DNA of 64,000 nt. It comes from Macrostomum lignano. Its lineage: Eukaryota. Under the pieces are notes generated by a model. That model saw only the letters and a program-made list of their open reading frames with translations, did not search any database and was not told where the DNA came from. Shown here piece after piece: positions 9,001 through 63,084 of this stretch. The position numbers were made by a program, and so were the translations under genes. Position 1 is the first letter of the stretch, and every line of letters begins with the position of its first letter. The stretch spans positions 372,001 to 436,000 of the forward strand of contig NIVC01000446.1 of the NCBI GenBank assembly GCA_002269645.1. The letters run 5' to 3'.

Positions 9001-12000
9001 TCACTCTTTAAGCGTTAAAAAGTAAATTGTCAGTCACTATCACAAAATTGAAATTTCACAAGCTCGATTCTCAACAAGCTCGATTCTTGACAAGCTCGAT
9101 TCTTCATAAGCTTGATTCTTCAAACAAGCTCGATTCTTGACAAGCTCGATTCTTGACAAGCTCGATTCTTGACAAGCTCGATTCTTCATAAGCTTGATTC
9201 TTCAAACAAGCTCGATTCTTGACAAGCTCGATTCTTCATAAGCTTTATTCTTCAAACAAGCTCGATTCTTGACAAGCTCGATTCTTGACAAGCTCGATTC
9301 TTCATAAGCTTGATTCTTCAAACAAGCTCGATTCTTGACAAGCTCGATTCTTCATAAGCTTTATTCTTCAAACAAGCTCGATTCTTGACAAGCTCGATTC
9401 TTGACAAGCTCGATTCTTCATAAGCTTGATTCTTCAAACAAGCTCGATTCTTGACAAGCTCGACTCTTCACAAGCTCGATTCTTCACAAGCTCGACTTTT
9501 CACAAGCTCGGAAGTTTCGCGTACTCAAAATTTTACCTGTCATATACAATCAGGATTTTGAATTTCAAAATTAGACAAGAGACTTTTCGACAATGCAAAG
9601 TTTCGAATTTTAAAAAGCGACCCTAGATGAGCCCGAAGTAAGGCTACAGGTACTGAGCAAACCAACTGCAGCCGATAATTCACTCTGGTCTGAAGAGTTA
9701 TCAATATTGCAGTCGGTTTGATTCTAACATAAAATTAAAGCTGTTAATAAACACTGCACACAATCGCAGACCACCGGTATGGTGCCAGATCCCGATCCCA
9801 GCTACGAGCTGACTCTGGACAATGTGAAGAAAATGCTAGCCATTGTGATGCGCTTCCGCTGCGGCATACCCGTTGTTGTTATGGGCGAAACTGGATGCGG
9901 CAAGACTCGCCTAGTGGAATACTTGGCCAAGCTGATGCGGCCAAGCACGCTCAGGATTGACAATATGATTGTTCTTAAAGTGCACGGCGGCATCACGGAA
10001 GATTCTATCGTTAATGTTGTTCGCAAGGCTGAGAAACTGGCCGACAGAAATTATAAAAGTATGAATAAGGCAAATCGGTCTGGCCAACTCTATACTGTTC
10101 TGTTCTTTGACGAGGTGAGTCGGTTGGCTGCTGATTGTGATAATAGTATTAATAATAATAAAAATAATAATCGCCAGATTTTAGCCTCATAAATTTCTTA
10201 CTCTAAAGAATGTTAGTTAAAAGCGAGTCTGGAACGATATTGCAGGAGCAGAGTAGCTCAACGTCTTACTGCATGCCATGACGCAATGTTTTTTCAGGCT
10301 CACTGGGTCTGGGGTGGCGGTTTTTAATGTTGCTAAATATCCAGCAACAGCGAAGCAAGCCAAATCCAGTGCATGGCAAGCAAGAGAAAAAGGGGTGGCC
10401 CCCCAGCCCTCAGCCAGGCTGATAAGCAGCTGGGCTTTCCTCTTGCCCGCTTGTGTCTGACTTTGCCCTCTCTCCTTACTGCTCTCTCATTGGCTGAGCT
10501 AGATTGGGCCTGCCCCTTACCCGGTTAAAAAAAAGACGGTCGCCAAAATGGCTTGCGACTGTTCATTCCGCGACCGTTGGTCGACCGTATGTCGACCGTT
10601 CGTCGACCGTTGCCTGTCACGCGTCGACCGTTGATTTTCGACCGTCGTTTTCGTCGACCTTTGCGACTAACAATGCGACCGTTTGGGGACCTACTCCTGC
10701 GACCGTTCCTGCGACCGTCCATCGACCGTTCCCACGACCGTCCATCGACCATTCCCGCGACCGTCCATCGACCGTTCCCACGACCGTCTATCGACCGTTC
10801 CCACGACCGTCTATCGACCGTTCCCGCGCCCGTTCCTGCGACCGTCCATCGACCATTCCTGCGACCGTCCATCGATCATTCCTGCGACCGTCCATCGACC
10901 GTTCATCGACTGTTCCTGCGACCGTTCATCGACCGTTCATCGACCGTTCCTGCGACCGTCCATCGACTGTTCATCGACCGTTCCTGCGACCGTTCATCGA
11001 CCGTTCCTGCGACCGTTCATCGACCGTTCCTGCGACCGTTCATCGACCGTTCCTGCGACCGTTCATCGACCGTTCCTGCGACCGTCCATCGACTGTTCAT
11101 CGACCGTTCCTGCGACCGTTCATCGACCGTTCCTGCGACCGTTCATCGACCGTTCCTGCGACCGTCCATCGACTGTTCATCGACCGTTCCTGCGACCGTT
11201 CCTGCGACCGTTCCTGTGACCCGTCCTGCGACCGTTCGTCCTCCTTTCATCGACCGTTCAGCGACTGTTTGGATTGCTCCGGCGACCCTTCGTCGCCCTA
11301 GATCGTATTGTGTTCTAAAAGTCTAAAAATGAAAAAAAGCGTGTAAAGACGGAAACTTTCTTTCGCTACTAATTATTACTTTCGACAAATTGAAGATTTA
11401 ACGCGTCGAAAATGTAGGAAGCGTAGACAGTGTAGACATTCTTCCCTGTTTATTTTCTACTTTTTGTTATCAATAATACCAAAAAACAAAAACATTTGCG
11501 TATATAAACGAAGCGCATAAAGGAACAAATGCCAAAGGAGTGACAGAGAAGTGGCCAGACGGAGGGGAGAGATGAAATTGTAAGATGGGTATTTTAGGTT
11601 AATGCAGTGCTAAATGCTAAACGCCCAGGCGCATGTGTCTCGCATTTTCGGAAACTGCACGTTCAAATTCGTGTGAGCAAGTAATTAATAGCTACATACT
11701 TCACGCTGCTCGCGAACATTTGTGACACTAATTATAACTACTGCTTTAACTGCTATAACTGCTACTGCTATAACTATAACTATTGCTGCTGCTATTTTAC
11801 CCACCACGGCTGCTCCGTGTTGGGCAAGTAGCATAAATTTTTAAATATCGAGCTGGTGCTAGATTTAATGTAGGTGGAGTAAGGGAAAGAAAAAACTGGT
11901 GCTCACATTGCCCAAGTAGGAAATTGCCACGAGCAAGTGTTAGTTTAAGTAGTAAAAAAATAATTCATTTTTTCAATAACTTGCCACACACTGAAGCTGC

Positions 12001-12815
12001 TGCACTTGTTGCCGTTTCGTTGTTGGTTTATTGTGCTGTTCTAGATGAATAAATACATTCGTCACATATATGGAATTCCATCATCTATGGTAGTGTCACT
12101 GAAAGGTGTGGAATAATGGCCACATCGATTAATTATTGCTTCTGGCTAAAAGTATACATACAATGAGAGAACACAAGCGTCAGGTAAAATGCACAGGTTC
12201 GTATAATGGAACAACAAATGTAATTAAGTAGTTGGGCTCCGTAGTAGGATGGGATAAAGCTAGGATAGGCTTAGAAAACGAGGCACAGTTTGCCATGAAT
12301 GAAAAATATACGAATATTTTGTTATGAAAGCAGAAAATGGCAGAAAGGCCCCTTAATTAGAGGCACAAAATGCAGAAAATACTTTTATAAGGGATATAAG
12401 GCTTCAGTAAAAGGGACTTGCAGCATATTGGAAGTTTACCTGGAGCTGATTACACACGTCTATTTTTATAGGATTAGTTTCATTTTCAGGAAGTACTTCC
12501 AATAGACAGTATGCCTTTCTTAATCCCGTAAATATAAGGTAGCATAAAAAACATATAGTTAAAATCGTGACATGGGTCAGCTGGCGTTCTGCAGAAACAA
12601 TTTTCAACGTGTCCCGATCCGATTTCGTAGCTTCCATTGCGAATAGACGACCTGATCATGTGCTTCTTTCCATACGTTGTTGGACATTAAGTCACTTGCA
12701 CTTTTTCATTCTCTAAGTAGCTAAGTAAAGAAAGGGCAAAAACGATGAGTTGGTGAAGCCATCGTGGGGGGGGGCTTCTCAAGGCGGATTTTTCTGCAAC
12801 TGTTTCCACCTGGCT

Positions 12816-12914
<99 letters not shown>

Positions 12915-12955
12915 GACAGAGAGAGAGACAGAGAGGGAGAGAGAGAGATCCAGAG

Positions 12956-13020
<65 letters not shown>

Positions 13021-16000
13021 TAGATAGAGAGAGATCTGTAGAGGGATAGAGGCAGTTCTCCCTCCATCTGGATCTCTCTTTAATGTAGCCAGACTCCGTG
13101 ACATACGGAGGGATCTAGAGTGACAGACGGAAAAGAACATGGACGGTTAATTTATTACGAAACGACTGTGGTAACGTATTCCTTGGGTATATTAAAAGGG
13201 TCGACCTCTACAAACGAGCTCATTACCCTCGTTAGCCTTTTAACCCTCGAGGGTTGTTACTTTTCCACCCATGGTATGTATAACCACGATCAGTTTCTAT
13301 GATGCGACGAAGACGAGGGCCCCATAGGCCTTCCCAGTAGAAACTAAGCCGTCCCCTAGGCGGCTTTGCCGCCTTCGCCAGCACCTCCGACGGTGGCTTC
13401 TGCGCTGACGCTGGCCGCCCGCTCGGCGGCGTTGCCGCCTTCGCTGGCCGCCCCCTCGGCAGTGTTGCCGCCTTCGCTGGCCGCCCCCTCGGCAGCGTTG
13501 CCGCCTTCGCTGGCCGCCACCTCGTCAGCGTTGCCTCCCGAGGATGCTTCACTGACATCGTCGCCGTCGTCGCAGGCGTCGACGCCTGCTTCAGCAGCTG
13601 TGCCATCCGAGGGCTCCGTGGCGGTGGCCGCTTCCCCACGGGAAGTCGCGGCCTGGATGTAGTATGGATTTTGTGAGAAAGCAGTGACACCAGTTATATA
13701 CCGTTTGCTTAATGACATCCGGCAGATGAATTGTAGTCATTGAGCTAAAATACAATTATTCACGTGCCACTCTCTACGGACATTTATGTAGTGTAACTGT
13801 AAACATTCCAGGGCGCTCCGATCGCATATTGACTCACCTTCTTCCGCGAGCGCAGATTAGACTCGGCGACACGCTTGTACGCCAAGGCGTACATCGGAGG
13901 GCGGATGACAACTCCGTGGTTTGAGAGGAAGCTGCAGATGGCCTTCTTCTTCCGCTCGTCCACCGCCGGCTTCCCCAAGCCCTTTGCCGTCTTGCCGGTG
14001 TACGACCTCCTCCGTAGTTCCCGCGGCGTGAAGACGGCCCTGTATGTCTCACGCAGCGCAGCATCGGCCATGCGCTCCACATTAGGCCCTTCTGCACGCT
14101 TTGCACACTTGTACCCGTCCACAGCGGCCATCATGCGCCGATAGGCCAAGTGCGCGACGGTCACACCAGGGTAGGCACGGCTGATGGAGACGCGTTGCTC
14201 GACTACTGGCACGGGCTCCGCGGCTTGGACCTCACTGCGGGCAGGCGGGGTATCGTGGGTCGTGGTCCTGCACGACGTGGCTGTCGTGGCCGACGACGCG
14301 TTGCGGTTCGTCAATGCAGGGACGGTGGAATAGTCGACATGTACGACTCCCGCCATGTCCCACGATACAGGTGCCGTACAAGTATCGTCCCGCTGTAGGG
14401 CGGCCTGCAGGGTTGTAACCGCAGTTTGGCAGCCTGTCTGCAGTTTGGAGCAGTAGGCCATGATGACTGCGGCCTGGTCCGTGGCGTCCTGCGCCGACGC
14501 GTGCCCCTTCGTCGCGGCCTCCTTTGCAGACTCATACGCCTTGCGGTACTCCGCTGCCTCCAACTTTGCAGCTGCCAGCTGGTCCTGCAGGGAGTCCCGA
14601 GCCCGCCGCAGCTCGTTCCGCTCGGCGTCCTGCAGTGCCTCCTGGCTCTGCGCAGCGGCACGTAGGGTCGACAGTTCCTGTGTGTATCGTTCGCACTGCC
14701 TGCATCCCGAGCGAGGCACATGCACTGCGGCCTGCTGGGGGAGGATGGCGAGGCAGGCAGTGAGGCCGGCCTGCGCTGCGGCTTTCGTCGCATGGGGGCC
14801 TCGTACAAGGCGGACGCGATACGCCTTACCGCCCCTTGCACACTTCATGTGCACAATGTCATCCTCCTTGTGTATTGGAGGCTCGCTGGTCGCGCCCTCC
14901 GGTACAATTGCAGCCTCGCTGTAGACACCGATTTTCCCGCCGTCCGCGATGCCAAACTCTACAATCCACCACCGAGGCTTCTCAGGTGGAGTCGTCGCCG
15001 GACGAGCGGCCTTCTTTGCCTGCACAGCGGCCGGCTCGTGCAATGCTCCGCGAGGTCGACGGCCGGCATTTCTCTTTCGAGTCGTGGAGCTCTCGTCCGT
15101 AGACATTGCGGCTGTAGTTCTGCAAAATGAGGGGAGTGTTCCCATTCAGCCTCCCTCTAGATGGAAGCTCTAGCGGATCTGGAGCTTGATCTCCATAATG
15201 TGCCACACATCTATGCACAGGAAACTGTTGATATCGTACTATAGTGTGGGTCCACTTAATGGGCTTATTTCCAAAAAAGACTTCTACGTACCTCATTCAT
15301 CAATCTGCAGTAGCAACAGTTATATTTTACATAGAGGGGAGAGAGGTGAGAGAGACCGGGAGAGAGAGGTGGAAGAAAAATAAACAGGAATAAAGCTGAG
15401 ACGGGAAGTAGACAGGCAGAGAATCTAGCTTGTCTATTCAAAGACTGCGTTTCTTTGCGTCATCAGGGGTACGCCTGATGTCTTCCCTAGTCTGGGTTCG
15501 ACCCTGAATGCAAGTTGCTAAGGAGAAGGACACAGATAGTACATTTGGAAATAAAGCGATTCTGCCTACCCCTATGAAATGTGCAATCAAAGCATTGTGT
15601 CCGGCCTGTACCGGTACACCTACCAGTGCTTTGCATTTATATACGTGTGTGATGCTATATATGGTGGTACCTATATATATATCGGTATATATATACCATG
15701 TGATTCACGATCGTGGATCACATTTGGGGCTGCAGAATTTCGTGTGAATTTCTCCCCTGCTGTACATGCAACAGGCTTTGCGGCAATGGGATAAGTATAT
15801 ATAGTAGACTAACGATGAAACGCTGTGTTCGTTATATAATTCGTTATATTTGTTCGTTATATTTGAAGTATTACTTACAGGTAGATGTAACAACTGGCTC
15901 GAAAATCACAACATATATATGTCTCGCCTGTGTCTGCATTTTCATCTGCTGGAACATCCGTGGGGCCTCCCGGAAGCCCTTTCCTTCCATTCCGTGCTTC

Positions 16001-19000
16001 CTACGCTTATTTCCTACGCCTATCCTACTTCTGCTATATGGTAGAAAATATGTGTATAGAATTCTACGTTTCGAAACGTACTATATATGTGGTACACTGA
16101 TGCTGCGCATGTTCCTGCAGATGAAAATTGCAGACACAGGTGAACAACACAAAAGATGGGATAGTAATTAAGGTGACACGCAAAAATGTGGGTATACAGA
16201 CAGACAAATATTAAGGTTTGAATTACTACTTACAGATAGACGTGAAAAACGAGCGAAAAGCGCAACGTAAAGCACGCAAAAAAGGTAAAAAGCACGCAAT
16301 GGAGGGACAACGCTTCAGCTTCAACCCATAGTCCTCAGTAGGACGATAAAACTGATTGAGGATGTAAGGCGAACTTGGCAGTTATCCAAAAAATATATCT
16401 TGGTAAAGAACTGTGGCTTGAAACATGTGATGAAAATGTATGAAAAATGACGTTGTAAGTGTAATTTACGAAATATTTGTCACGCTCCTTTGAAATGCAT
16501 AGTACTGTTCCACCGAAAATACGTGCCACGACTTACAGAGGTGTACCGTCACAAAAAATGCTACGGTAGACTCACGTCCTACAAGTACTGGCATGACGGG
16601 GTGTAAAGACAAATAACAGACATAGAGAGGCATACAAAGTGTCATAAGCAAGGAGAAATGAGGTGCATAAAAACAGCTGTAAAATGGTGCACCGTGCCCT
16701 TGTAAACCCTTGTGCAATTTAACGAATGAAATGTGCCACGGGAACTTGGGTAAAAAAATTTGGGCAAAAAATTGTGGCATTGGAACACACCGGGCCACAT
16801 GACAGGAAGGGAAGGGGCAGTAAATAGCCCCAAACGCATATGCATATGTGCGCACATATGGCAAGGCCTGGCGCGGCATACCGTATAGCTATGCATAGAT
16901 TGCTGGAATATTGTTGTAAATGCGTAATTATAAATACGTTGACGAGGTGTGGGAAATGCATTGAACACTGTGTGCAGCGTACATGGGAAGCAGGGAATTC
17001 CCTTCGAAACTAGTTTCGAAAGTAGACGCTATCTTGCTTTGGCATGACACAGCTAAGCACAGTTTGCCAAAAGGAAATTAAAGTAGCTGAAATTCCAGCA
17101 GCTGCGGCCGGCGTGTTTCACGACAGAGACAACTTCTTAGTCCGGCCCATATAGTGCGTCACAACCGCTGACGAAATGCAGCAGTGAATGTGACGAAAAG
17201 ATTTACGTGTCCCCAAGAAATTTCGAGCCTGCATAAGCTTAAGCTGTCTTGTATGTCGGCCTTTTATTCGACGGCAACCCAGCCCGACAATGTCCATGAT
17301 TACTATGCACGCACAGTGAGCATGGACAGTCATGCATGTACATGTACATGACATGTCAATCAGTTATGTCACTCAGTCGCTCAGGTGAGCTAGTCATTCA
17401 GCATGGACACTGACTGACTCATTGATGACGAGTCGAGCTCGACTGCTGATCGGCGTGCCGCCATGGAAGCGGCTCCGGGATGGCGACGTGCAGGCGGAAC
17501 GGCCGATCCTGGTTGGCCCCCTCCGTGGCGGCCCGCCACAGATCGACGTTGGTAACGGCCTCCTCCTCCCACGGCCTCAGCCACGACAGCCAGGGACAGC
17601 TATTCGCCAGCTGTGTCAGGACGCATACGGTCAGCCGGACGTCCTGCAGGGAGAGCCGGCGAAGGCCCCTGCCGACGGCACTGGTACACAGGACGACCAC
17701 GCCGTCGTCGGAGAGGTTGGGGCACTGGGCGATGAACAGCTCGTGCAAGTCCGGAAGGCCCAGCTGGACAGGCCGCTCGCCACTTATAGCGGACCAGCCC
17801 TGCGTGGTGACCAGCCGGCAGTCGTCCAGGTGCAGGGTGTGCAGGCGAGGCAGCTGCGTCAGTAGACATTCCAGCAGCGCGTCTGTGCAGCAGATGTCGG
17901 ACAGAGACACGTGGCTGAGTTCTGTGGAATGGGGAATTCCAATTTCCAGTGTTCAGCGACTGGTCCCCCCAGCGCTATGGTTCGTTTACGGTACGGTAAG
18001 GCTCGTACTGACGGCCACGAATGAAACTCACCCCTACAGCCAGTGACTGCATGCACGAAATCGTCACCCGTACAGCGAAGAAACTGGCCGGGCGCGACGG
18101 TCAGGAGCTGCAGGGCCGACGGCATTGGCTGTCGGGCGTGGCCCGAAGCATGGTCGTGGAGGCGGGCTGGCGAGTCGAAATCCGCCAGGATGATGAGCTC
18201 CACCAGCTGCGGCTGACGGGCGGCCAGCAGGTACCCCTCAGCCCGGAGTCGGCGACACCGGAGCAGCGTCAAGCTCCGCAACCCCGGCCACGCCGCGAGA
18301 AGGAGCCGGAGGCCGCGGTCCGTCAGTTGGACGCAGTTCTCGAGGACGCATTTGCGCAGCTGGCTGCCGTTGCGGCCGACGGACCCTGACAGCTGCGCAG
18401 CGAGCTCGTCGCAAATGGTCGTGCCGCCGATGGTCAGCTCCTGCAGGCTGGGCAGACCGGCAGTGACAACCAGCAGTCCTGTGATATTGGTGAATTGTTG
18501 GAGTGAGTAGGAGAGGCATTTAGTATTTTGCCCATAAGTACGAGTGGCATTTTGTAGGAGTCGCATTATGCGCAGGAGAAATAAAATCGCGTACAAATTG
18601 ATCTCCTACACGATGGAACACATACCAGCACTGGCGCCACAGTGATCGACTCTGACAAGGCCGCCCAAACAGCTGCGACATCTGTCCGACTGCAGGGCGT
18701 CGTCGACGGCCGAAAAGCCCTCGAAAGCCAGCCGCACCGACGAAAGCCGGCACAGCAGTCGGCGGAACAGCGGTTCGCAAGTGCAGAGATCCGCCAGGGC
18801 TCCGACATCGTCAAGCTCAATGTGAGCGAGGTGTGGACAGCCGTCTATAAGGGTCCTCAGCGCCTCGGCCGTCAGCATGCCTCGGCAGTCCAGGAGGCGG
18901 AGATGACGCAGACGGGGGCAGCCACGGCCGGCGGCGACCAGCGGATTGACCGCTGACTGGGTGCAGTCAATCGCCGTCAGCAGCAGGCCCCGGAGGTTGG

Positions 19001-22000
19001 GGCAGTCCCTCAGCAGGAGCGACAACTGCTCCATCGTCGCGTCTGTGGGTTGCGAAAGGAAGCCGAATTCGACTTCCCGCACCGAGGCCGCCAGCCTCTC
19101 CGTAACGCGAGTGAGAACGTCCGAGTGCGGGTCGGCCTCGAGTACTGCTGGGTCGAGTCGCAGTCGTGGCCACAGTAGGGGTTGCATTGCCAACTCGTGC
19201 CAGCGACGGCTCACCCGTGCGCACCGCAGGAGGCTCTGTAAATCCAGCGAAGCGAAAATCCGCGTAATCAACTCCGCTGGCAGCGCGTCCATGGTGTAGG
19301 GCTGCAATGTTCGTAGGGATATTCGTTCATTACCGACGAGCGACAAATTTGAGAGGCACACTTTGAAGCAGTGGCGTGTCTAGGGCGATACGGGGATATA
19401 TCCCCCCCATTATAAGAAAATTTTGTATAGCACACATTCTCCGCTAATCAGTAAATAATTTCACCTTTTATAAATTAGACAAATAAATTAAATTGTACAG
19501 GATTCATACTGGTGCCGTTCTGGTACAGCAAGTGGATAATTTCAGCCTAATCATGAGTTTAACTAATTAATCTGGCCCTTTGGTACCACTAATCTATATT
19601 ATCCTTTCTTTCCCGAAATAAACTTTCCAAAAATAGTTATTGTCGTGTTGTGTCGAAAATACAAAAAATCATATACAGTATTTATGTACCCTAATTTTAA
19701 TATATTTCTATATAGATACAAAGCCTAAAACTGTAGAGAAACATTTTACTATGAAGAAACACAAATTTATTACTTTTGAGCAGCATGCTAAGTAACGTAA
19801 GCAGCGAATATACTATCAAGATGAATATTGTCGACCTCCTTTTGGTCTTGTGGCTTTCGAAGTATAAGTACATTTGTACAAAATACAATTCCAGTTACTA
19901 AGCTATTTTGCATGAACTAAAATGAATAGTATTTTAAGCATATTCTAAAAAGCCTATATGCGCTCTAATTACTGTAAGGAACGATCTGCTCAGAATATGG
20001 GATTAGCTCATTCCTAAAACAACACAATTGGAAATAAAAGCATATATAACGATATTTACCAGATACAACAAAACAACTTTAAGCTGCGATAGAAGAATCC
20101 GCTCGGTCTAATATTTCTGCGTTTAATAAATGCCTGCAAAAAAAGCTATTTGCAGTGCAAGTAAACAAGTTCAAATTCTATTTACTATACAGAACATGAT
20201 AAATCCTACGAGTAAATTAAAGCTTAACATAATTTTCATGTCAAAATAGCATAAGTCTAATTTTTACTACACTAGTATATTTTTTAATTGCTGTCTTGCT
20301 GCATAGTAAGATAGTGAGAAGTCATTATGGCCTAATGAGGTTAGTAGTGAACACCAGAGCATGCAAATAAAAATAAAAAAAGAATGCAGATGGAGAAGTC
20401 GTTAGAGAAAAAGGACAGTTTCTTCTCTGAGTATAATAATAAATGTGTAAATGATTGCATTCAGCTAAAGCATCAGGCATAAAAAGAGTTAATAAATAAT
20501 GATGACCATGCAAAAGAGAAGCATACACACACATGCGCGCGCGCAGTTGAGCCACACTGCGGCAATACACCGTGAAGACAGAAGGCAGGTTAACACATTT
20601 TCTTCTAATAAAGAGGGACGAAAACAAGGCAGACAAAAATATTAGTAGAATAAAGGTAGATCCCACGTCAAGAAAAAGGGAAAATAACACAGATCATACA
20701 AACTCTGACACAAAGGATTGGATTTATCCTTCCCTTTTCCTTTTTGCTTTCGTGATGCTGCTATATAGCTATAGTAAAATTGAAAGCATATACATATTGT
20801 TAGGTTTACATTCTAGAAATACATACAGGCAAAAACAGAATGATCTAAAACATCCACAAACATATGTATGTCTATTTTAAATAAGACTTTATTTATAAGA
20901 CGGCTATAGACCGGCTATGGCGGAGTGAGACCTCTAAGTAAAAAATGCCTCAAACAGCATGTCGTTAACTGACTGAGTCCCGGCTGAGTCCCGACTGGGA
21001 CTGCAACTCAGGGGAAATATGCTCTCCTACGCCCCTTTAGCTCCCAGCTGTCCGAAACGGCACGCTAATATTCCTTGTGTATACCGTAATTACTAAGCCG
21101 CTACCGTACCTATATGGTAGCAACATTGGTAGCAGTGTGCCACCGGCTTACAAGGAAAACAATAGCGCAGCAAAAGTAAAATAGCGCAGGTAAAATTTGG
21201 CACCTAAGAACTGTTTTCACCATATATTCACGCACTTTTCCACAAAGGTGGTACAATGCAGCCAAAGATTGTACTCAGAAAGTCGGCAGATCGAACTAGC
21301 CATCTTACAAACAGACCATCAAAGCCTGCTCACTATAAAATAAAAGTTATTCACAAGGGACAATCTATCACTTCACAATTATGACACTACATCACTCCTA
21401 GTTAGCACCCAGCGCGTGGCATTATATACAGATACGTCCATTTACGCCTCTTGGTCACTTGATATTTGCTGTATGGACATGGAATTGGAAATGTGTAATG
21501 ATCAAAAGCCGCTCAAAATCACGATTAACGATTTACGATTAACGATTTAACGGTCATGACGTTCTAATCGCGGTGGAAAATAAACACGGCCAATTTACAT
21601 GGGGGGGACCGGCAGACCGTTCTTACGGCTCCTTACACGAAGTAGAACGGAATGACAAGCAAATAAATGTAAACTACAGGTGCACACATTCCGGTGTCTG
21701 TGTTTAGCTGGACCTGCACTTTCCATCAGTTTTTTTGTGCGTTAAGTGGACCACCCCCAGGGCGAAAGGAATTAGGAGATTATTGAATGAACCTGCCGCA
21801 TCCTGTATGCTTATATTATGTGACTCTCATAGGCTTTAGTCAATAAAAAAATTTCATGACGTCATTTGCCCTCGATTGCGTGGACCACGCTTATTATATA
21901 ACTAGTCAGTTGTAGCTGTGTACTGTGCACAATGTGCACAATGTCTAATGGGATTTAGATACATCGATTATTGTACTTGCGCCTCTGTTACCATCACGTG

Positions 22001-25000
22001 ATTAATATTACAGATTCCAGGCCATTCATTGGGGTCCCAATAAACTACAATGAAAGCAGCCAGAAAGGCAAAAACGGGTAATGTACGTAAGGAGTCCAGG
22101 TGAACGGAGAGGTCTAGCTAGACCGGAAAAATCTGATGAAAAGTGCACGTAAACACACACACCAACACGAGGGACTCGTACAGTTCCAAAGGAAGGTTTG
22201 CACAGGTGGCACAGTCAATTGGCAGACGCAGGATGTCAAGCCGAAAAGGAAAATTGCACATGCGGAAGGAACGCGACAGCCGAGTTGGAGACGCAGCAGC
22301 TGGCCACCACCGTGCCCGCCAGTGGGTCCAGGTCGAAATAATACTGCGACACGCGGACGAACGGGTCGTGAACGAGGCGCCGCACGTGAGCTAGGGCGCA
22401 CCCACCCTGCAGCCGGTTACCGCTGAACTGGTACAGTGGGTTATCCCGTGGCTCAACGTGTTTCTCCGTTAGCAATGGGCGCATACGAAGTGTGACGCGC
22501 TCGCGGTCGTCCAAGTTGATGGTCTCGATGCGAGCAAAGTGGAACTGCAGCAGAGGCTCGGACCGCGTGGCGTAGGCTATGAAGCATGACGCGAACTTGG
22601 CAAATCGAAGCTGAGGTCGGAACACCTCGAACGTCATTCCGCCGGGCAGCGTTACCCGGGTGTAGGCGCGGCGGGTGCGCGCCCGTCGGTAAAGACGCGC
22701 GCCTTCTGCGGTGACAACGGCCGGACGACCTACTGCTCTGCTCTTGGAGAACGGCGACTCCACACCCAGCTCCGCCGCCAGATGACGATGAGCAACCTAA
22801 ATGTGAGCACGAGATAGGGATAGGGGGATGGCCAGCTCCACTCCCTCGTCGGCAACGTAGAATGCCCCACCCCCACCAGTCAGACTGTGAGACATATTGC
22901 AGACAATATATAGGATTAAGCATCATTTGGCCTCACGTGCCGCGTGATCAGCCGTACGGCCTGCGCTGCCACGTGTCGCGAGCCGTGAATACGCGCCCGA
23001 AGCCTCGCATGGTGCGATTCGAAGAGGCCGGCCGACAGACGGTGAATGGGACCGAACAGGTGTGCGAAGGAAACAAAATGTTGACACACTTGATGGGCGT
23101 TGTAGGTCATAGAGCTCTCCGTGTACAGGGCCCGCAGATTGACGTAAAAATGCTGCAGTGACGCCTGCGCCCTCAGCACCTGCATCAGCGGCCCGCCGTC
23201 CAGTGACAGCCAGAAGATGCTGGCAGAGAGCAGCATGAAGTGCTGATAATACCTGGCCAGGTATGGATATGGGGTATGACGGGTACTATGTGTACTGTGT
23301 GTAACTAAATAGCTACGGACAGGGTACTAACAATTTACTTACTGAATTGTTAGTAAATTGTTCGTACCTTGTCCAGTAGCAACTTAGTAACAGATGGCAC
23401 GTGTGTGCGACACTTGACAGTACTGTCAAGTGTCGCACACACTTGTCATCTGTCCTGGAATGCATGTATCCATGGTACATAAAGTCCGGCGCGCAGCTTT
23501 AAAATCTAGATAAATTTACCTACGCTCCAGAAGGGACTCGAGCACGATGGGCCCGTAGACGAAAAGCCATGCCTCCAGTTCGTGACCACGCCAGTGACCC
23601 AACTCGCGAAGTGTTCGCGGCGCTCGCTGGTGACTCACAGGAACGTGGATACCAGACATGATTGCGTCCGCCTCCGCGATACGGCGGGATAGGTCGGGCG
23701 CCGGGCAGTTCCTGCATTAAATGCGAGGCAGCTCGTTGTTGGTTACTTTGCAACATAGCACGTATATGCATACCCACGTCAGGCCAAAAGGGTGAATCAT
23801 GCCATTTAGGTCATATTCCTATGAAATGCTACGACGGTTACATTATCAGTATGGAAACGCTCAAATACGTAGGAGCAGGCACTTACTTCGACGGTTTATT
23901 TTTAGGCGTAAGAAACAGCTGCCTGAGAAGCCACCCCACGAGACCGGCGCACAGCTGGTGCAGATAGCACGGTGGACAGGACATGATGTAATCGAAGCCA
24001 TGCAGCTCGATTAGAGGCGAGACAGCCATGACGCCCAGGTTGTCGTCCTTGCCGGGCGGCTTGGTGCGGTGCAGCATGATGGTGTCCGCGAGTTCCCGCA
24101 CCTCCGGTCGCTGTACGCCAGCGTCCACTGCCAGCTTCCTTGCAGCTGCCGACACCATCTCGGGATAGTAGCGGGAGTTTACTGCTGGTAGAGGGACCGT
24201 CATGGTGTAGCAGCTGCCGCACCCATGCTTGCCGTTGTGCTGCCGAAGTCCCGTAGCCTCAGCACGCTGAGGAGCGTCAAAGATGAACAGTAGGGGATGC
24301 AGACGAAGCCTACCGGCACGTGTCCCATCGGGCCCGCCGCCCCTGCTGTATGCCACGCCTGCGTTGCGAAGTTCGTTCAGAGCCGGGACTAACCGTGGCA
24401 GAAAGGCGGTGGAGCGGACTTTATGTTTGCAGGCCAACAAGCCGCAGATGACCATAAAGCGGCTCTTCATCTCTTCGGCAAGTTCGACGATGCTGAGGTA
24501 CACTGGAAACAGTTGCATGACGGTATTGCCAAACACAGGAAATCCGTCGACGTTCACGGCGTAAGTGAGGTCGGAGCGCTCTGCAAGGTGAATCGTCCGC
24601 TTGAAAGCCGTGTAGCAGGCACTACTTCCCAAGTGGAGACGGTCTAGGCAGATGGGCTGATCTACAGGGTAGACAACATGGCGCAGCATCCCACCAACCT
24701 CAATGTGGAGTCGGAGCTGCGCCGCGAAGTCGAATAGCCAGAACTTGGCGACGTTAGTGTCACCTAACGGTGCGTGGCACTGTGGACAAGTATTTGCACA
24801 GGGTTCATCAAGCTGGCTGCCACAATGCATACAAAACGAAGACGCATGGCTCCGCGCAAGGGACGAGCATTTCAAGAACTGGCTCAGATGGTACACGCTT
24901 GTAGGGATGTCTGCACCCTCCGGTAGTACAGCCTGTGTGTAGCACAGCAGGTTGCGAACTCCGCGTTGCGACAGGTTCTCCACGTCACTGAACATGTGCA

Positions 25001-28000
25001 GTAGCGTAGCGATTGTAGCGTAGGACTGTCGGGCTCCCTGGTAGGCGGTTCTGTTGCACAGTACACGCAACTGCGCCTCAGCATCGAGGCCTTCCGCGGC
25101 AGCCTCATCGTCGACTGCACCGTCGTCGCTACTCGGTGCCAGTTCCGCGTCACTATCAGCGCTGGACGCGCTTGCCTCGGCGTCGGAGGCCTCGGCGTCG
25201 GAGGCCTCGGCGTCGCTGGCTGCGTCTGAGGCCTCGGCGTCGCTGGCTGCGTCTGAGGCCTCGACGTCGCTGGCTGCGTCGGAGGCCTCGGCGTCGCTGG
25301 CTGCGTCGGAAGCCTTGGCGTCGCTGGCCTCGGCGTCGGAGGCCTCGGCGTCGCTGGCCTCGGCGTCGGAGGCCTCGGCGTCGGAGGCCTCGGCGTCGCT
25401 GGCCTCGGCGTCGGAGGCCTCGGCGTCGCTGGCTGCGTCTGAGGCCTCGGCGTCGCTGGCTGCGTCTGAGGCCTCGGCGTCGCTGGCTGCGTCTGAGGCC
25501 TCGGCGTCGCTGGCCGCGTCGGAAGCCTCGGCGTCGCTGGCCTCGGCGTCGGAGGCCTCGGCGTCGCTGGCCGCGGCGTCGGAGGCCTCGGCGTCGCTGG
25601 CCTCGGCGTCGGAGGCCTCGGCGTCGCTGCTGGCTGCGTCGGCTACATTCCCCGGACGACACGCATCAGTGAGTAGGCGCAGTTTTTTGGACATGCGGTA
25701 GCGCTGCTGCCGTAACCGTGCTGCAAACCGTTTTCTGTCATTGCGCACGGCATTTCCGTTTTCTGAGGGCTGTGACATTTCCCAAATGGCTGGAAGGGAA
25801 ATTAGGTAGACGACTGGAGATCTTCATTTGTAGCTTGAACCAGTCAGCCGTTGAACGACTCAAGCCAGTCAGACTGCCCTCTATGTTTTTCTATCACTGA
25901 CCATCTGTACATGCATATTACCAATGTAAACAGCCAGTTGACTACCAAGTCAAGGTTAGTCCCTTATATATTCTAATGGTTATACAGCTCTCTGTACGAA
26001 CGACTTATTAGATGGTAGCTGCGATCTGGAATAATTTGTTCAGACAGGGAGCTATAGATGGATCCACAGATCAAGCCTCACAACGCTAAAACGCTTCATA
26101 CTAAACAGTCAAAATACACTGAAAACCCCAAATTCAAAATCCTGCAAAAACCCTGATGACAAATTTTCAGTACCATTCCTATTCACCGTGCCAACATTCA
26201 GTTCACGGAAGCCTTATTTGTATCATTTATTTTACAGAGTTCCAGTTTTCCATTGTCACAAACAGTTTAGCTGCTTCTGTCACAAAAGTTTCGCTAGCAT
26301 ATATCTTACGTAGAAACTTTCCTATACCGTCCTATACAGTCTTCCACGGAACAGAAATTTAACAATTTCAATATATCTATGACAGGGATTCAGGGAAACC
26401 TTTACATTATCAACTTTTTTACTATTAATCTTAATAGTTGGCAAGAACTGCAACACCGATCCTGAGGCCTTCAGTACATGTCACTTATACTAAATTAGTA
26501 AATACTTATATGCTGCTGGTCCCTTTGCCTACAAATACTGTCTACAAATCTCTACAAATGCTGTATAAAAGACCTTGTCTGTCGACTACACACTACTCAA
26601 CTCACTCACTGACAGCCGACTGTGCTTCCGCATTTCCAGCTTCGTTAGGTACTGGGTTTGCAAAGAAACGAAAGGACTTCACCATAAAACCAACTGTTTT
26701 TGGCTCACAGATGGTCACAAAAACCGTTACACAGAAAAGTTCTACAACAGTGGCAGCGGTAGAAATGGTCGAAGAACTGTACCACAAGGGGTCCAAAATG
26801 GTGTGAAAGTGTCTGAGGAGGGTGTGAAAATGGTTCGAAAAACAGCCGAGAGAGGGTCGAAAACGGTAGAAAAAACGGTCGACAAAAGCCCAAAAAACAG
26901 TCGAAGTGGAGGGATGGTGGACGGTGAAACCGTGGTGGGAAAAACGGTCGAAAGAGTGGTCGATAAAACGGTCGACGGACGGTCGACGAAACGGTCGACG
27001 GACGGTCGACAGAACAGTGGACAGAACGGTCGACAGATGGTCGCAGAGACGGTCGCCGAGATGGTCGACAAGACGGTCGACAGAACGGTCGGCAAGCCGG
27101 TCGGCAAAACGGTCGACAAAACGGTCGACAGACGGTCGACAGACGGTCGACAGACGGTCGCAGAGACGGTCGCAGACAAGGTCGCAGACAAGGTCGCAGA
27201 GATGGTCGAAGTAACGGTCGCAGATACGGTCGCAGAGACGGTCGCAGAAGAACGGTCGCAAAAACAGTCGACGGAACAGTCGCTACCAACGGTCGCATGC
27301 CACGGTCGCAAGAATTAGTCGCACAGTCGCACACATCGACCGTGCAGAATGGTCGACTACTCGGTCGTTCACATGGTCGCATCCGGCGACCGTGCTTAAC
27401 GGGCGCTGGAATGGTCGCAATAATAGTCGACGCCGGCCATCACGGTCGCAGGACGGTCGAGGGCCCTGAAATGCGACCGTTATTTTTTTAACCGGGTTAG
27501 GCTGGGTTTCGTCCGTCTGACTGTGACCCTCTCTTCTTACTGCTCTCTCATTGGCTGAGCGAGATTGGGCCTGCTCCCTAGGCTGGGTTTGGTCCTTCTG
27601 ACTTTGACCTCTCCTTACTGCTCTCTCATTGGCTGAGCTAGATTGGGCCTGCCCCTTAGGCTGGGTTTCGTCCGTCTGACTGTGACCCTCTCTTCTTACT
27701 GCTCTCTCATTGGCTGAGCGAGATTGGGCCTGCTCCCTAGGCTGGGTTTGGTCCTTCTGACTTTGACCTCTCCTTACTGCTCTCTCATTGGCTGAGCTAG
27801 ATTGGGCCTGCCCCTTAGGCTGGGTTTCGTCCGTCTGACTGTGACCCTCTCTTCTTACTGCTCTCTCATTGGCTGAGCGAGATTGGGCCTGCTCCCTAGG
27901 CTGGGTTTGGTCCTTCTGACTTTGACCTCTCCTTACTGCTCTCTCATTGGCTAAGCTAGATTGGGCCTGCCCCCCTAGACTGAGTTTCGTCCGTTTGACT

Positions 28001-58900: not shown

Positions 58901-59144
58901 ATTTTTGCTCGAAATTTGCTAACAAGTAACTACTGGTTTTTCGTCTTTGGCATTTTTGGAATGAGTGCCGCTGTGTCAGAAGTCACCAGACACAATATAC
59001 GTGCAATAGATACAATATAAGTACAATATTCGAATCCGGTAACAGTGATACGGCTAGCAAGGAAGTCCTTTTTATGAGAAAAAAAGTTGGCGTTATTTTT
59101 TTCGGCCTGCGTTTTTTTTTCGAAATCAGTCAGTGGCAACACTG
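55986..59144 (+). mobile_element. hAT-superfamily DNA transposon (~3.16 kb)
   Basis: 13-bp TIR CAGTGTTGCCACT (55986-55998) and AGTGGCAACACTG (59132-59144) bracketing a hAT-type transposase. No matching 8-bp TSD seen (CTGGCAAT vs GTACACTG). Confidence 0.78.
56343..58892 (+). CDS. hAT-type transposase (BED-like zinc finger, DDE core, C-terminal dimerisation motif) with a spliced second exon
   Basis: 725-aa ORF: FCLFC..KQHMKAKIH (BED-like), YSISYDES, FSDGCSVMVG, SCTLHIV (CxxH), YPLLSRLA..HGNADAERF..KRNRL. Donor AAG|GTAAAA at 58481, acceptor TATAG|AAC at 58569; the 108-codon exon ends PKKKKN* at 58892. Confidence 0.85.
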
Positions 59145-61800: not shown

Positions 61801-61980
61801 CCATTAGGGCAGTTATACTCATTCCTTTAGATAACTTGTCAACGATTGGTTAGGCCAGAGGCTCAGCAAATCAGCATTAGTCTAAGGTTGGAGGAATGAT
61901 CTTTAACTACAAAAGTGCCAGACAAACTGGTTTTGGAATTCACTGACTAAAGATATTACATCTCGACTTCCAACTGAACA

Positions 61981-62839: not shown

Positions 62840-63084
62840 GTGAAGATTTTGGCTGTAAAATGCATTACCGAGATTAGGAAGCTTTCAGGTTTTTTTAGCA
62901 CTTTTTCTAAGCAAGAATTCGCTGTCTTGCACAGCGCTGAATGGGCTTTGGCTATAGACAATCTCGGTTTAGAAACAATACAGCAAGACAGTAACAACTG
63001 AAATTTTGCTTGCTTGCGTTGTCTTGTAGCATTTAAAAATTAATTGAACTCTCAATAGACAATCGTCTCTATACCTCATACTGG

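What the first reader, a model, noticed from the sequence alone, without database searches (positions are those of the whole stretch)
10517..27499. 17-kb three-gene CACTA/EnSpm 'cargo' transposon, apparently intact, nested in an RNF213 intron
Seen: near-perfect 24-bp CCCGG TIRs, an exact TTA duplication that restores the interrupted repeat, mirrored subterminal arrays, and three co-oriented spliced genes (transposase, F-box/LRR, BEN-like), none with a visible frameshift or premature stop. Established: CACTA/EnSpm elements make 3-bp TSDs, have subterminal repeats, and in plants encode a transposase (TnpD) plus a DNA-binding helper (TnpA). Inference: this is a recent, possibly still mobile giant animal CMC family that carries an extra ubiquitin-pathway gene as a stable module. 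I do not know of such an architecture being described.
Basis: partly seen in the sequence, partly recalled or inferred. Interest (0 to 1): 0.9.

Follow-up and report, generated by a model that had tools for sequence, protein, structure and literature searches.

The report
Young three-gene flatworm DNA transposon
This is a real, very recently mobile 17-kb cut-and-paste transposon of the flatworm Macrostomum lignano. Besides its transposase it carries a helper gene with a weakly supported BEN-like domain and a complete F-box/LRR ubiquitin-ligase adaptor gene. A divergent sister family carries the same adaptor gene, which suggests the transposon uses the host's protein-degradation machinery.

Summary
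Window 10520-27496 is a 16,977-bp element with 22/24-bp terminal inverted repeats (TIRs) starting CCCGG and a TTA target-site duplication (TSD). It has mirrored subterminal CGACCGT arrays and three intact, co-oriented, GT-AG-spliced genes on the minus strand, antisense to the host RNF213 gene.

The window is Macrostomum lignano NIVC01000446.1. A second copy on NIVC01000227.1 differs by 0.2% in substitutions. It has the same TIRs but a different 3-bp TSD (TAC), so the family transposed very recently.

The transposase has no direct Pfam hit. It matches proteins that pass Pfam Transposase_21 (E down to 7e-37) and carries the CMC (CACTA/EnSpm-Mirage-Chapaev) signature: DDE plus C(2)C plus H(4)H. 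The termini are CCC, as in animal CACTA-like elements, not CACTA.

A sister family shares 44-48% transposase identity and has the same order: transposase, F-box/LRR, ORF3. Four more distant relatives have only transposase plus ORF3. The F-box gene therefore looks like a single acquisition that was kept.

ORF3 has a coiled coil and a weakly supported BEN-like domain. I infer that it binds the family-specific subterminal repeats, as TnpA does. The role of the F-box protein is unknown. I found no description of this architecture, but Repbase and Dfam could not be searched.

Verdict: a new variant of a known kind.

The parts
10517..10519 (.). Left copy of the 3-bp target-site duplication (TTA)
   Evidence: Intact units of the flanking minisatellite show the empty-site sequence.
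10520..10543 (+). Left TIR, CCCGGTTAAAAAAAAGACGGTCGC
   Evidence: only two matches in the window, 0 expected. It matches the right TIR at 22/24 positions. It contains one ACGGTCG motif, inverted relative to the adjacent subterminal array.
10571..11269 (+). Left subterminal array: 47 copies of CGACCGT in 11-12-bp (23/46-bp) periodic repeats. Proposed binding sites for ORF3 and/or the transposase.
13359..15145 (-). ORF3 gene, 2 exons (15145-13838, 13652-13359), 533 aa. It has an N-terminal beta-rich 'WWIVEF' region, a CxxC motif plus a long coiled coil, a C-terminal BEN-like helical domain and an acidic repeat tail. Proposed DNA-binding helper.
   Evidence: An identical partial protein is annotated in M. 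lignano (P0151).
17419..19292 (-). F-box/LRR (FBXL-type) gene, 3 exons (19292-18626, 18478-18032, 17921-17419), 538 aa
   Evidence: Pfam F-box-like E 1.1e-13 and LRR_At5g56370 at 29.9 bits (cutoff 27). PDB FBXL2 E 5.5e-19, plus Skp2 and FBXL17. Gene model.
19823..22062 (.). 2.24-kb AT-richer intergenic segment, present in this copy and absent from the second copy. The junction has GAA microhomology.
22236..25778 (-). Transposase gene, 4 exons (25778-23887, 23711-23520, 23252-22937, 22796-22236), 986 aa. It has an N-terminal (ASDAE)n low-complexity repeat and a CxxC..CxxC zinc ribbon (C316-C334). The catalytic residues are D411, D501 and E773, with C(2)C at 520/523 and H(4)H at 748/753.
26875..27459 (-). 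Right subterminal array: 25 copies of CGACCGT on the minus strand, mirror image of the left array
27473..27496 (-). Right TIR; reverse complement reads CCCGGTTAAAAAAATAACGGTCGC
27497..27499 (.). Right copy of the target-site duplication (TTA)
9728..10189 (+). Open frame holding the upstream flanking RNF213 exon (AAA Walker-A region, ends ...LFFDEV). The element lies in the intron that follows.
28279..28722 (+). Open frame holding the downstream flanking RNF213 exon

Best explanation
Window 10520-27496 is an intact, autonomous copy of a very young CMC-superfamily (CACTA/EnSpm-Mirage-Chapaev) cut-and-paste DNA transposon of Macrostomum lignano. It sits antisense in an RNF213 intron.

Shown:
- The 986-aa DDE transposase carries the CMC signature (D411, D501, C(2)C, H(4)H, E773).
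- The family makes 3-bp TSDs with no fixed sequence (TTA, TAC; AAG in a related family).
- Two copies at unrelated loci differ by 0.2%.
- The order transposase, F-box/LRR, ORF3 is shared with a sister family. More distant relatives carry only transposase plus ORF3.

Inferred:
- The transposase recognises the CCCG-type TIRs and cuts with a 3-nt stagger.
- ORF3 oligomerises through its coiled coil. Its BEN-like domain binds the dozens of 7-bp subterminal motifs and brings the two ends together. This is the job TnpA does for maize En/Spm, without homology to TnpA.
- The F-box/LRR protein binds host Skp1 and so forms an SCF E3 ligase that serves the element. Most likely it removes a host factor that restricts transposition or expression. 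Less likely, it tunes the levels of the element's own proteins.

The F-box gene was probably acquired once, in the common ancestor of the two families that carry it, and then retained.
For: Structure: TIRs, TSD and mirrored arrays. Three open reading frames with canonical splice sites.

Identity of the locus: L006 equals window 8021-28389 at 100% identity, on M. lignano NIVC01000446.1 (names).

Mobility: the second copy (L007 2912-17263, NIVC01000227.1) has identical TIRs and a TAC/TAC TSD inside a different minisatellite in a different gene. It differs by 31 substitutions over about 14.3 kb aligned.

Superfamily: phmmer against 1.84 billion representatives gave 5360 hits. Hits P0009 and P0012 (E 7e-37 and 4e-35 to the query) pass the Pfam Transposase_21 gathering score, and P0010 also touches Plavaka. 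D, D, C(2)C, H(4)H and E are invariant in a 14-sequence alignment. That is the CMC signature as stated in PMC12730594. CCC termini match the animal CACTA-like 'TRC' elements (PMC1636069).

Module conservation: L001 has all three genes in the same order. Its TIR is CCCGATTGAAAATC at both ends, with 11 TCGGCAC on the left and 30 GTGCCGA on the right. The window and L001 transposases are sisters with 91% NJ bootstrap, inside a six-member clade with 100% support.

Two-gene relatives without an F-box gene: L002, L003, L004 and L008. L008 has TIR CCCGCTGGAAAA and TSD AAG/AAG.

ORF3: a profile of six C-terminal domains hits only two PDB sequences out of 177,635, and both are BEN domains (BEND6 E 0.29, Bsg25A E 0.86). 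Both align on the LLxxLFTxEELxxxSxTG motif. Pfam BEN is the top family for 2 of the 6 homologues (best E 0.0031). A coiled coil is predicted with pLDDT 70-80. The subterminal motif differs between families (CGACCGT, TCGGCAC, TTTACGC), as expected if a fast-evolving element-encoded binding protein recognises it.

F-box/LRR.
Against: - The window transposase has no direct Pfam hit. Membership rests on transitive homology and motifs.
- The termini are not CACTA or CA..TG.
- The window's own ORF3 does not hit Pfam BEN even at E 10. The BEN evidence is sub-significant, and the single-sequence AlphaFold model was too poor to use (pLDDT 45).
- Nothing shows that ORF3 binds the repeats, that the F-box protein binds Skp1, or that it has a substrate.
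- Only two copies of this exact family were seen, so activity today is not demonstrated.
- The L001 copy has no matching TSD (CAG vs TCA) and a frameshift inside its F-box. The conservation argument therefore rests on one other family, represented by a slightly damaged copy.
- The genomic context of a third F-box/LRR relative (P0152, 38% identity) is unknown. A host origin or host paralogues cannot be described.
Confidence: 0.85

Rival explanations
1. The F-box/LRR gene is a passive passenger. A host gene was captured by chance, as in plant Pack-CACTA or Pack-MULE elements, does nothing for the transposon, and is simply too young to have decayed.
For: Gene capture by CACTA elements is documented (PMC6379663, listed). 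The two copies of the window family are so young (0.2% divergence) that intactness within the family says nothing about selection. The L001 copy has a frameshift in its F-box. Four related elements do without the gene.
Against: The gene holds the same position and orientation in two families whose transposases are only 44-48% identical and whose F-box/LRR proteins are 36% identical. tblastn segment boundaries fall at the same exon breaks, and apart from that one frameshift the three coding segments stay open. The two families are sisters (91% bootstrap). A dead passenger would not stay open over that much divergence. It is a complete gene with an F-box and a full LRR domain, not a fragment.
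Confidence: 0.15
2. It is a PIF/Harbinger-type element. The TTA duplication fits the TWA target of that superfamily, which also uses a second, DNA-binding protein.
For: The window TSD is TTA. The element has more than one gene.
Against: The second copy has TSD TAC, and the related L008 element has AAG. The transposase is homologous to Transposase_21/Plavaka-type proteins, has the CMC C(2)C/H(4)H signature, and has no DDE_Tnp_4 hit. ORF3 has no Myb/SANT hit.
Confidence: 0.01
3. The element is not an autonomous unit. It is a chance composite or a segmental duplication, with host F-box and BEN-like genes lying between two unrelated repeat arrays.
For: No direct evidence. The annotation of this assembly does not recognise the transposase or the F-box/LRR gene here, and instead calls an antisense 122-aa ORF.
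Against: The similarity between the two loci starts and stops exactly at the TIRs. Each copy is flanked by its own 3-bp duplication within a different minisatellite and a different host gene. The same architecture recurs in L001 with different sequence.
Confidence: 0.02
4. The family is intact-looking but no longer mobile. It may be silenced, or lack a needed host factor, and the two copies are simply the last insertions.
For: Only two loci carry the exact marker ORF that I could look up. The second copy carries a 2.24-kb deletion and a 1-bp deletion in ORF3.
Against: Divergence of 0.2% and a fully open master copy make recent activity certain and present activity plausible. The ORF3 1-bp deletion lies in a G5 run and may be a long-read assembly error. 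From memory, annotated gene names in this assembly derive from transcript clusters, which suggests ORF3 is transcribed.
Confidence: 0.35

Closest known systems
Maize En/Spm and plant CACTA elements (TnpD transposase plus TnpA helper)
   Same: The DDE transposase belongs to the same superfamily (Transposase_21 relatives; C(2)C and H(3-4)H motifs). Both make 3-bp TSDs, have short TIRs followed by long arrays of a short subterminal motif in mirrored orientation, are large (10-20 kb), have spliced genes, and place the transposase upstream of a second protein that probably binds the subterminal repeats.
   Different: The termini are CCCGG, not CACTA. The helper (ORF3) has no similarity to TnpA, no Pfam Transposase_24 hit, and instead a coiled coil plus a BEN-like domain. 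The genes look like separate units rather than alternative splice forms, though this was not tested. A complete F-box/LRR gene sits between them. The host is an animal.
SmTRC1 of Schistosoma mansoni and other animal 'TRC' CACTA-superfamily elements (PMC1636069)
   Same: These are animal hosts, flatworms included. They have a Transposase_21-type transposase and TIRs that start with CCC rather than CACTA.
   Different: SmTRC1 is about 4.7 kb with 54-bp TIRs, 2-bp TSDs and a single ORF region. The present element is 17 kb with 24-bp TIRs, 3-bp TSDs, subterminal arrays and two extra genes.
Fungal DNA transposons carrying a TET/JBP dioxygenase gene (Kyakuja/Dileera/Zisupton, Plavaka, EnSpm, hAT and others; PMC12730594)
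   Same: These are cut-and-paste transposons, some from the CMC/CMCT group, that stably carry an accessory host-type gene alongside the transposase. The accessory gene plausibly acts on host control of the element.
   Different: The accessory gene there is a DNA-demethylation enzyme in fungi. Here it is an SCF substrate adaptor in an animal. I found no report of an F-box accessory gene.
VANDAL (Mutator-like) elements with the VANC anti-silencing protein in Arabidopsis (PMC5735166, PMC10398659)
   Same: There, an element-encoded accessory protein recognises family-specific short repeats in the element's own non-coding regions, and protein and motifs co-evolve. That resembles the family-specific subterminal motifs here. 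It is also the precedent for a transposon-encoded counter-defence.
   Different: The superfamily, the proteins and the kingdom all differ. No anti-silencing activity has been shown here.
Viral F-box proteins (polerovirus P0, poxvirus ankyrin/PRANC proteins, nanovirus Clink; from my own knowledge, not checked here)
   Same: A genetic parasite encodes its own F-box protein to redirect the host SCF ubiquitin ligase against host defence or cell-cycle proteins. This is the model for the proposed role of the element's F-box/LRR protein.
   Different: Those are viruses. Here the carrier is a chromosomal cut-and-paste transposon, and neither substrate nor Skp1 binding is known.

Membership tests
CMC (CACTA/EnSpm-Mirage-Chapaev) superfamily of DNA transposons | Transposase homologous to TnpD-type (Pfam Transposase_21) transposases | tested here: met
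   There is no direct Pfam hit. However, phmmer links the window protein at E 7e-37 and 4e-35 to P0009 and P0012, which pass the Transposase_21 gathering score. Three further relatives hit below it, and P0010 also touches Plavaka. The feature is met by transitive homology only.
CMC (CACTA/EnSpm-Mirage-Chapaev) superfamily of DNA transposons | [quoted passage not shown] | tested here: met
   D411, D501, C520-x2-C523, H748-x4-H753 and E773 are invariant across 14 aligned sequences, including the Transposase_21-positive ones.
CMC (CACTA/EnSpm-Mirage-Chapaev) superfamily of DNA transposons | Short TSD (2-5 bp; 3 bp for EnSpm/CACTA) | tested here: met
   TTA/TTA in the window, TAC/TAC in the second copy, AAG/AAG in related L008. 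L001 shows no matching TSD.
CMC (CACTA/EnSpm-Mirage-Chapaev) superfamily of DNA transposons | Termini 5'-CACTA (plants) or 5'-CA...TG-3' (most CMCT lineages) | tested here: not met
   The termini are CCCGG...CCGGG. This matches the CCC core reported for animal CACTA-like elements (PMC1636069). It argues against the literal name 'CACTA', not against the superfamily.
CMC (CACTA/EnSpm-Mirage-Chapaev) superfamily of DNA transposons | Assignment to EnSpm vs Mirage vs Chapaev by phylogeny with reference (Repbase) transposases | not testable with these tools
   No Repbase or Dfam library was available. Relatives hit both Transposase_21 and DUF1258.
En/Spm-type two-protein system (TnpD + TnpA) | Second protein homologous to TnpA | tested here: not met
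   ORF3 has no Pfam hit at E 0.1 as a whole. Neither its N-terminal 300 aa nor its C-terminal 123 aa hits a TnpA-type family (Transposase_24) at E up to 10. The similarity is in position, in the presence of subterminal repeat arrays and in the inferred role.
En/Spm-type two-protein system (TnpD + TnpA) | Arrays of a short subterminal motif in opposite orientation at the two ends | tested here: met
   47 plus 25 CGACCGT motifs, mirrored. L001 has 11 plus 30 TCGGCAC motifs, mirrored.
BEN domain (Pfam PF10523) | Significant match of the ORF3 C-terminal domain to the BEN profile or to solved BEN structures | tested here: inconclusive
   The window ORF3 has no hit even at E 10. Two of six homologues hit BEN, best E 0.0031. 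The six-sequence profile finds only BEN domains in the PDB, but at E 0.29 and 0.86. The structure model was too poor for a fold search.
F-box/LRR (FBXL) substrate adaptors of SCF ligases | N-terminal F-box followed by leucine-rich repeats | tested here: met
   F-box-like 51.2 bits (cutoff 24.3), F-box 36.8 bits (cutoff 20.5), LRR_At5g56370 29.9 bits (cutoff 27). Best PDB matches are FBXL2 at E 5.5e-19, then Skp2 and FBXL17.
F-box/LRR (FBXL) substrate adaptors of SCF ligases | Binding to Skp1 and recruitment of a substrate | not testable with these tools
   This needs a pull-down or a co-folding and interaction assay.
PIF/Harbinger | TWA target duplication, DDE_Tnp_4-type transposase, Myb/SANT partner protein | tested here: not met
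   TSDs TAC and AAG occur in the family and a related family. There are no such Pfam hits.
Pack-type (gene-fragment-capturing, non-autonomous) CACTA elements | Non-autonomous element carrying fragments of host genes | tested here: not met
   The element encodes its own full transposase, and the F-box/LRR gene is complete and conserved in a sister family.

The most novel reading that the evidence does not exclude
The element-encoded F-box/LRR protein is a counter-defence factor. It plugs into the flatworm's Skp1-Cullin ligase and sends a host transposon-control protein to the proteasome, for example a piRNA-pathway, chromatin-silencing or DNA-repair factor. This is what some viruses do with their own F-box proteins. 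It would be the first such ubiquitin-hijacking module described in a eukaryotic cut-and-paste transposon. It would sit beside a previously unrecognised BEN-type end-binding helper that defines a new CMC lineage found in Macrostomum and in marine and other metagenome contigs of unknown source.
Probability: 0.2. Interest if true: 0.85.

Novelty: new variant of a known kind. Interest (0 to 1): 0.66.

Why it matters
Cut-and-paste transposons of animals are usually thought of as one-gene parasites. This family has three genes and was active so recently that a master copy is still fully open. It lives in a laboratory model with transgenesis and RNAi (from memory).

The conserved F-box/LRR gene makes a concrete question testable: do transposons, like viruses, recruit the host ubiquitin system against host control?

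The ORF3 helper and its family-specific repeat motifs offer a natural system for studying how element-encoded DNA-binding proteins co-evolve with their sites. They may also indicate a transposon origin for some BEN-domain proteins.

Practically, an intact 17-kb-capacity transposon from Macrostomum could become a large-cargo vector for that model. It also shows that the current annotation of this genome misses or mis-calls these genes.

Tried and rejected
- Pfam on the transposase exons and on the spliced protein gave only weak zinc-ribbon hits.
- The word-indexed protein search found nothing for the transposase. It found one hit each for ORF3 and for the F-box/LRR protein. It is too insensitive for this family.
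- Exact look-ups of the exon-1 transposase ORF and the ORF3 ORF found nothing. P0004, P0006 and P0152 are not on record, so the context of the third F-box/LRR relative stays unknown.
- The useful trick was to look up the 122-aa antisense ORF that the assembly's annotation calls inside F-box/LRR exon 2. This returned both genomic copies.
The single-sequence model was poor (pLDDT 45), so I ran no fold search.
- PIF/Harbinger was considered because of the TTA duplication and rejected.
- A nested insertion was considered for the 2.24-kb segment missing from copy 2. I rejected it because the segment has no inverted ends, and GAA microhomology suggests a deletion.
- No TSD could be found for the L001 element.
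- Literature searches for CMC/EnSpm elements in Macrostomum, for transposon-borne F-box genes and for BEN domains in DNA transposons found nothing relevant.
- The phage, plasmid and E. coli collections and the prokaryotic contig scans were not used. They cannot hold this sequence.

Full report
**1. What is in the sequence**

The left end reads GCCCC-TTA-CCCGGTTAAAAAAAAGACGGTCGC. The right end reads GCGACCGTTATTTTTTTAACCGGG-TTA-GGCTGGG. The 24-bp terminal inverted repeats (TIRs) agree at 22 of 24 positions. The TIR pattern, searched with up to three mismatches, occurs only at these two places in the 64-kb window, against none expected. The element proper is 10520-27496 (16,977 bp).

It is flanked by a TTA target-site duplication (TSD) and sits inside a 78/159-bp minisatellite. 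Intact units of that minisatellite read ...GCCTGCTCCCTAGGCTGGG. Removing the element and one TTA therefore restores a repeat unit.

The heptamer CGACCGT occurs 77 times in the window against 3.4 expected. There are 47 copies on the + strand at 10571-11257 and 25 on the - strand at 26875-27459. The single motif inside each TIR is inverted relative to the neighbouring array.

**2. The genes**

All three genes are on the minus strand. The host gene is on the plus strand and is RNF213. One of its exons matches solved RNF213 structures at E 1e-49. The assembly's annotation has a 5501-aa AAA/RZ-finger gene spanning the locus.

I built explicit gene models. Every junction is GT-AG and keeps the reading frame.
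- Transposase: 25778-23887, 23711-23520, 23252-22937, 22796-22236; 986 aa.
- F-box/LRR protein: 19292-18626, 18478-18032, 17921-17419; 538 aa.
- ORF3: 15145-13838, 13652-13359; 533 aa.

No frame contains a stop or a frameshift.

**3. Where the window comes from, and a second copy**

ORF3 is 100% identical to a partial protein annotated in Macrostomum lignano. The assembly's annotation calls a 122-aa ORF antisense to F-box/LRR exon 2. Looking that ORF up returned two loci in assembly GCA_002269645.1.

L006 (NIVC01000446.1:380021-400389) is identical to window 8021-28389. The element therefore lies at about 382520-399496 of that contig.

L007 (NIVC01000227.1) holds a second copy at L007 2912-17263 (14,352 bp). 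It has the same two TIRs but is flanked by TAC on both sides. It lies inside a different, roughly 31-bp minisatellite in an intron of a PARP/VIT/VWA-domain gene, again antisense to the host gene. Neighbouring units of that minisatellite read AAATACTTGG, which is the empty site.

Aligned over about 14.3 kb, the copies differ by 31 substitutions (0.2%), spread evenly over coding and non-coding parts. Copy 2 lacks 2,240 bp of the transposase-F-box/LRR spacer (window 19823-22062; GAA microhomology at the junction) and 251 bp near 16385. It also has a 1-bp deletion in ORF3. That deletion lies in a run of five G and could be a long-read assembly error.

So the ends occur together elsewhere with an independent 3-bp duplication. 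The family moved very recently, and the window copy is the intact one.

**4. What kind of transposase**

Pfam finds nothing significant in the window protein. A full phmmer search against 1.84 billion representative proteins gave 5360 hits at E<=1e-3.

Five full-length relatives at 35-44% identity form the immediate family. Thousands of proteins at about 25% identity follow. Of five of these that I scanned, two pass the gathering score of Pfam Transposase_21, the TnpD family of En/Spm. Three more hit it below threshold, and one also touches Plavaka.

In a 14-sequence alignment the following residues are invariant: D411, D501, C520-x2-C523, H748-x4-H753, E773, and an N-terminal CxxC..CxxC zinc ribbon. 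[quoted passage not shown]

The 3-bp duplications fit EnSpm. The termini are CCCGG rather than CACTA. CCC termini were noted for animal CACTA-superfamily elements, including the flatworm element SmTRC1 (PMC1636069).

I therefore file the element in the CMC superfamily, with two caveats. The homology is transitive, and the sub-lineage cannot be assigned without Repbase references. PIF/Harbinger, suggested by the TTA, is excluded by the transposase and by the TAC and AAG duplications.

**5. Is the three-gene layout a stable module?**

The closest relative, P0001, is M. lignano PAA59085.1. It lies on NIVC01002297.1 (locus L001). tblastn with the three window proteins finds, in the same order and orientation, a transposase (48% identity by tblastn over its main segment; 44% in the full-length phmmer alignment), an F-box/LRR gene (about 36%, in three segments that break at the same places as the window exons) and an ORF3 (26%).

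That element runs from L001 9053 to 22906 (13.9 kb). Both ends read CCCGATTGAAAATC. It has its own mirrored subterminal motif, with 11 TCGGCAC on the left and 30 GTGCCGA on the right. It shows no matching TSD (CAG vs TCA), and its F-box is interrupted by a frameshift. This particular copy is therefore not pristine.

Four further relatives carry the transposase followed directly by an ORF3 homologue, with no F-box gene:
- L002, a marine metagenome contig.
- L003 and L004, two contigs from a JGI metagenome.
- L008, a third M. lignano family. Its transposase cluster holds 12 near-identical annotated proteins, with gene suffixes up to g17.

L008 is a 9.1-kb element (7391-16488) with TIR CCCGCTGGAAAA, TSD AAG/AAG and TTTACGC subterminal motifs.

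In a neighbour-joining tree the six transposases form a clade with 100% bootstrap support. The two F-box-carrying families are sisters at 91%.

The simplest reading has three parts:
- Transposase plus ORF3 is the ancestral layout of this lineage.
- The F-box/LRR gene was acquired once, in the common ancestor of the window and L001 families.
- It has been kept while the proteins diverged to 36-48% identity.

**6. What the accessory proteins are**

The 538-aa protein is a standard FBXL-type adaptor. F-box-like scores 51 bits (cutoff 24), and an LRR family scores above its cutoff. The best PDB matches are FBXL2 (E 5.5e-19), Skp2 and FBXL17. The only other relative found is an M. lignano UniRef protein (P0152, 38% identity, annotated with an extra histone-H1 domain). 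Its genomic context could not be retrieved.

ORF3 homologues share three parts: a beta-rich N-terminal region (WWIVEF...), a CxxC motif followed by a long coiled coil, and a helical C-terminal domain with the motif LLxxLFTxEELxxxSxTG. The L008-family ORF3 replaces the N-terminal region with a zinc finger.

A profile of six C-terminal domains matches just two of 177,635 PDB sequences. Both are BEN domains (BEND6 at E 0.29, Bsg25A at E 0.86), and both align on that motif. Scanned singly, two of the six domains hit Pfam BEN (best E 0.0031), but the window protein does not. A single-sequence AlphaFold model was confident only for the coiled coil.

'BEN-like' is thus plausible but not established.

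**7. How it most likely works**

Shown: a DDE transposase of the CMC type, 3-bp duplications without a fixed sequence, and very recent movement.

Inferred:
- The transposase recognises the CCCG-type TIRs and makes 3-nt staggered target cuts.
- ORF3 oligomerises through its coiled coil and binds the many 7-bp subterminal sites, pairing the ends. TnpA does this for En/Spm, although the two proteins are unrelated. The change of subterminal motif from family to family (CGACCGT, TCGGCAC, TTTACGC), alongside fast ORF3 divergence, fits a cognate protein-site pair.
- The F-box/LRR protein would bind host Skp1 and direct SCF-dependent ubiquitination. Its long retention suggests it benefits the element. 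The most attractive idea is removal of a host restriction or silencing factor, by analogy with viral F-box proteins (my own knowledge) and with transposon-encoded anti-silencing proteins such as VANC (PMC5735166). Self-regulation of transposase levels is an alternative. Neither has any direct support yet.

**8. Novelty and verdict**

Large multi-gene CACTA elements, animal CMC elements with CCC termini, and DNA transposons carrying accessory host-type genes (for example TET/JBP in fungi, PMC12730594) are all known.

Full-text searches turned up no report of three things: a CMC lineage whose second gene is a coiled-coil/BEN-like protein; an animal cut-and-paste transposon with a conserved, complete F-box/LRR gene; or any account of these Macrostomum elements. 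Repbase and Dfam could not be consulted.

I rate it a new variant of a known kind. It is of real interest to transposon biologists because it is young, intact, in a tractable model, and poses a testable host-manipulation hypothesis.

Noticed in passing
window 10400-10519 and 27497-28051; L007 2870-2911 and 17264-17340: Both copies of the element sit inside minisatellite arrays within introns of very large genes (RNF213; a PARP/VIT/VWA gene). Both are antisense to the host gene. This may reflect a target preference or survivorship.
   Followed up: partly
window 18021-18389 (+): The public annotation of this assembly calls a 122-aa ORF antisense to F-box/LRR exon 2 as a gene. At these loci it annotates neither the F-box/LRR gene nor the transposase, and ORF3 only as a partial protein at the second copy. 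The element's genes are mis-annotated.
   Followed up: partly
window 10536-10542 and 27474-27480: The single CGACCGT motif inside each TIR points the opposite way from the motifs of the adjacent subterminal array.
   Followed up: no
L001 9053-9277 and 22330-22906; L008 7391-7800 and 16300-16488: Related families keep a similar TIR start (CCCG-N-T-N-R-AAAA). Each has its own subterminal heptamer: TCGGCAC in L001, TTTACGC in L008, CGACCGT in the window.
   Followed up: partly
window 23390-23453: A 64-bp near-perfect palindrome (two 32-nt arms, 94% complementary, no spacer) lies inside intron 2 of the transposase gene.
   Followed up: no
window 25174-25626: The N-terminal part of the transposase is a long (ASDAE)n acidic low-complexity repeat encoded by a 15/27/213-bp tandem array. 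The two copies differ here by in-frame indels. ORF3 also ends in an acidic repeat (13409-13535), and the L001 proteins have comparable repeats.
   Followed up: partly
window 55986-59144: A 730-aa open frame with no internal stop (56328-58517, +; no Pfam hit at E 1e-3) is bracketed by a perfect 13-bp inverted repeat, CAGTGTTGCCACT / AGTGGCAACACTG. It looks like another DNA transposon, hAT-like by eye, but no 8-bp TSD is visible.
   Followed up: partly
window 61978-62874 (+): An open frame encoding a rhodopsin-family GPCR (7tm_1, E 1.7e-51) lies downstream of RNF213.
   Followed up: partly
window 1-64000, e.g. 147-725, 6043-6717, 28849-30400, 30981-31770, 37470-38300, 39300-42030, 42643-43515, 44690-45233, 50717-51664, 52076-53448: The RNF213 introns are packed with long minisatellite arrays of many different unit sequences. 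The window has an unusually high tandem-repeat load.
   Followed up: no
P0152 (UniRef A0A1I8F2G2, M. lignano): A third F-box/LRR relative (38% identity) is annotated with an N-terminal linker-histone H1/H5 domain. Whether it lies in another element or is a host gene could not be determined.
   Followed up: partly
P0004, P0158-P0163 (M. lignano UniRef models); P0006: Older gene models fuse the transposase and ORF3 of the Mlig001703 family into single 1200-1800-aa 'C2H2-type domain-containing' proteins. Another transposase relative is fused to a 'guanylate cyclase domain' model. These are probably annotation chimeras.
   Followed up: no
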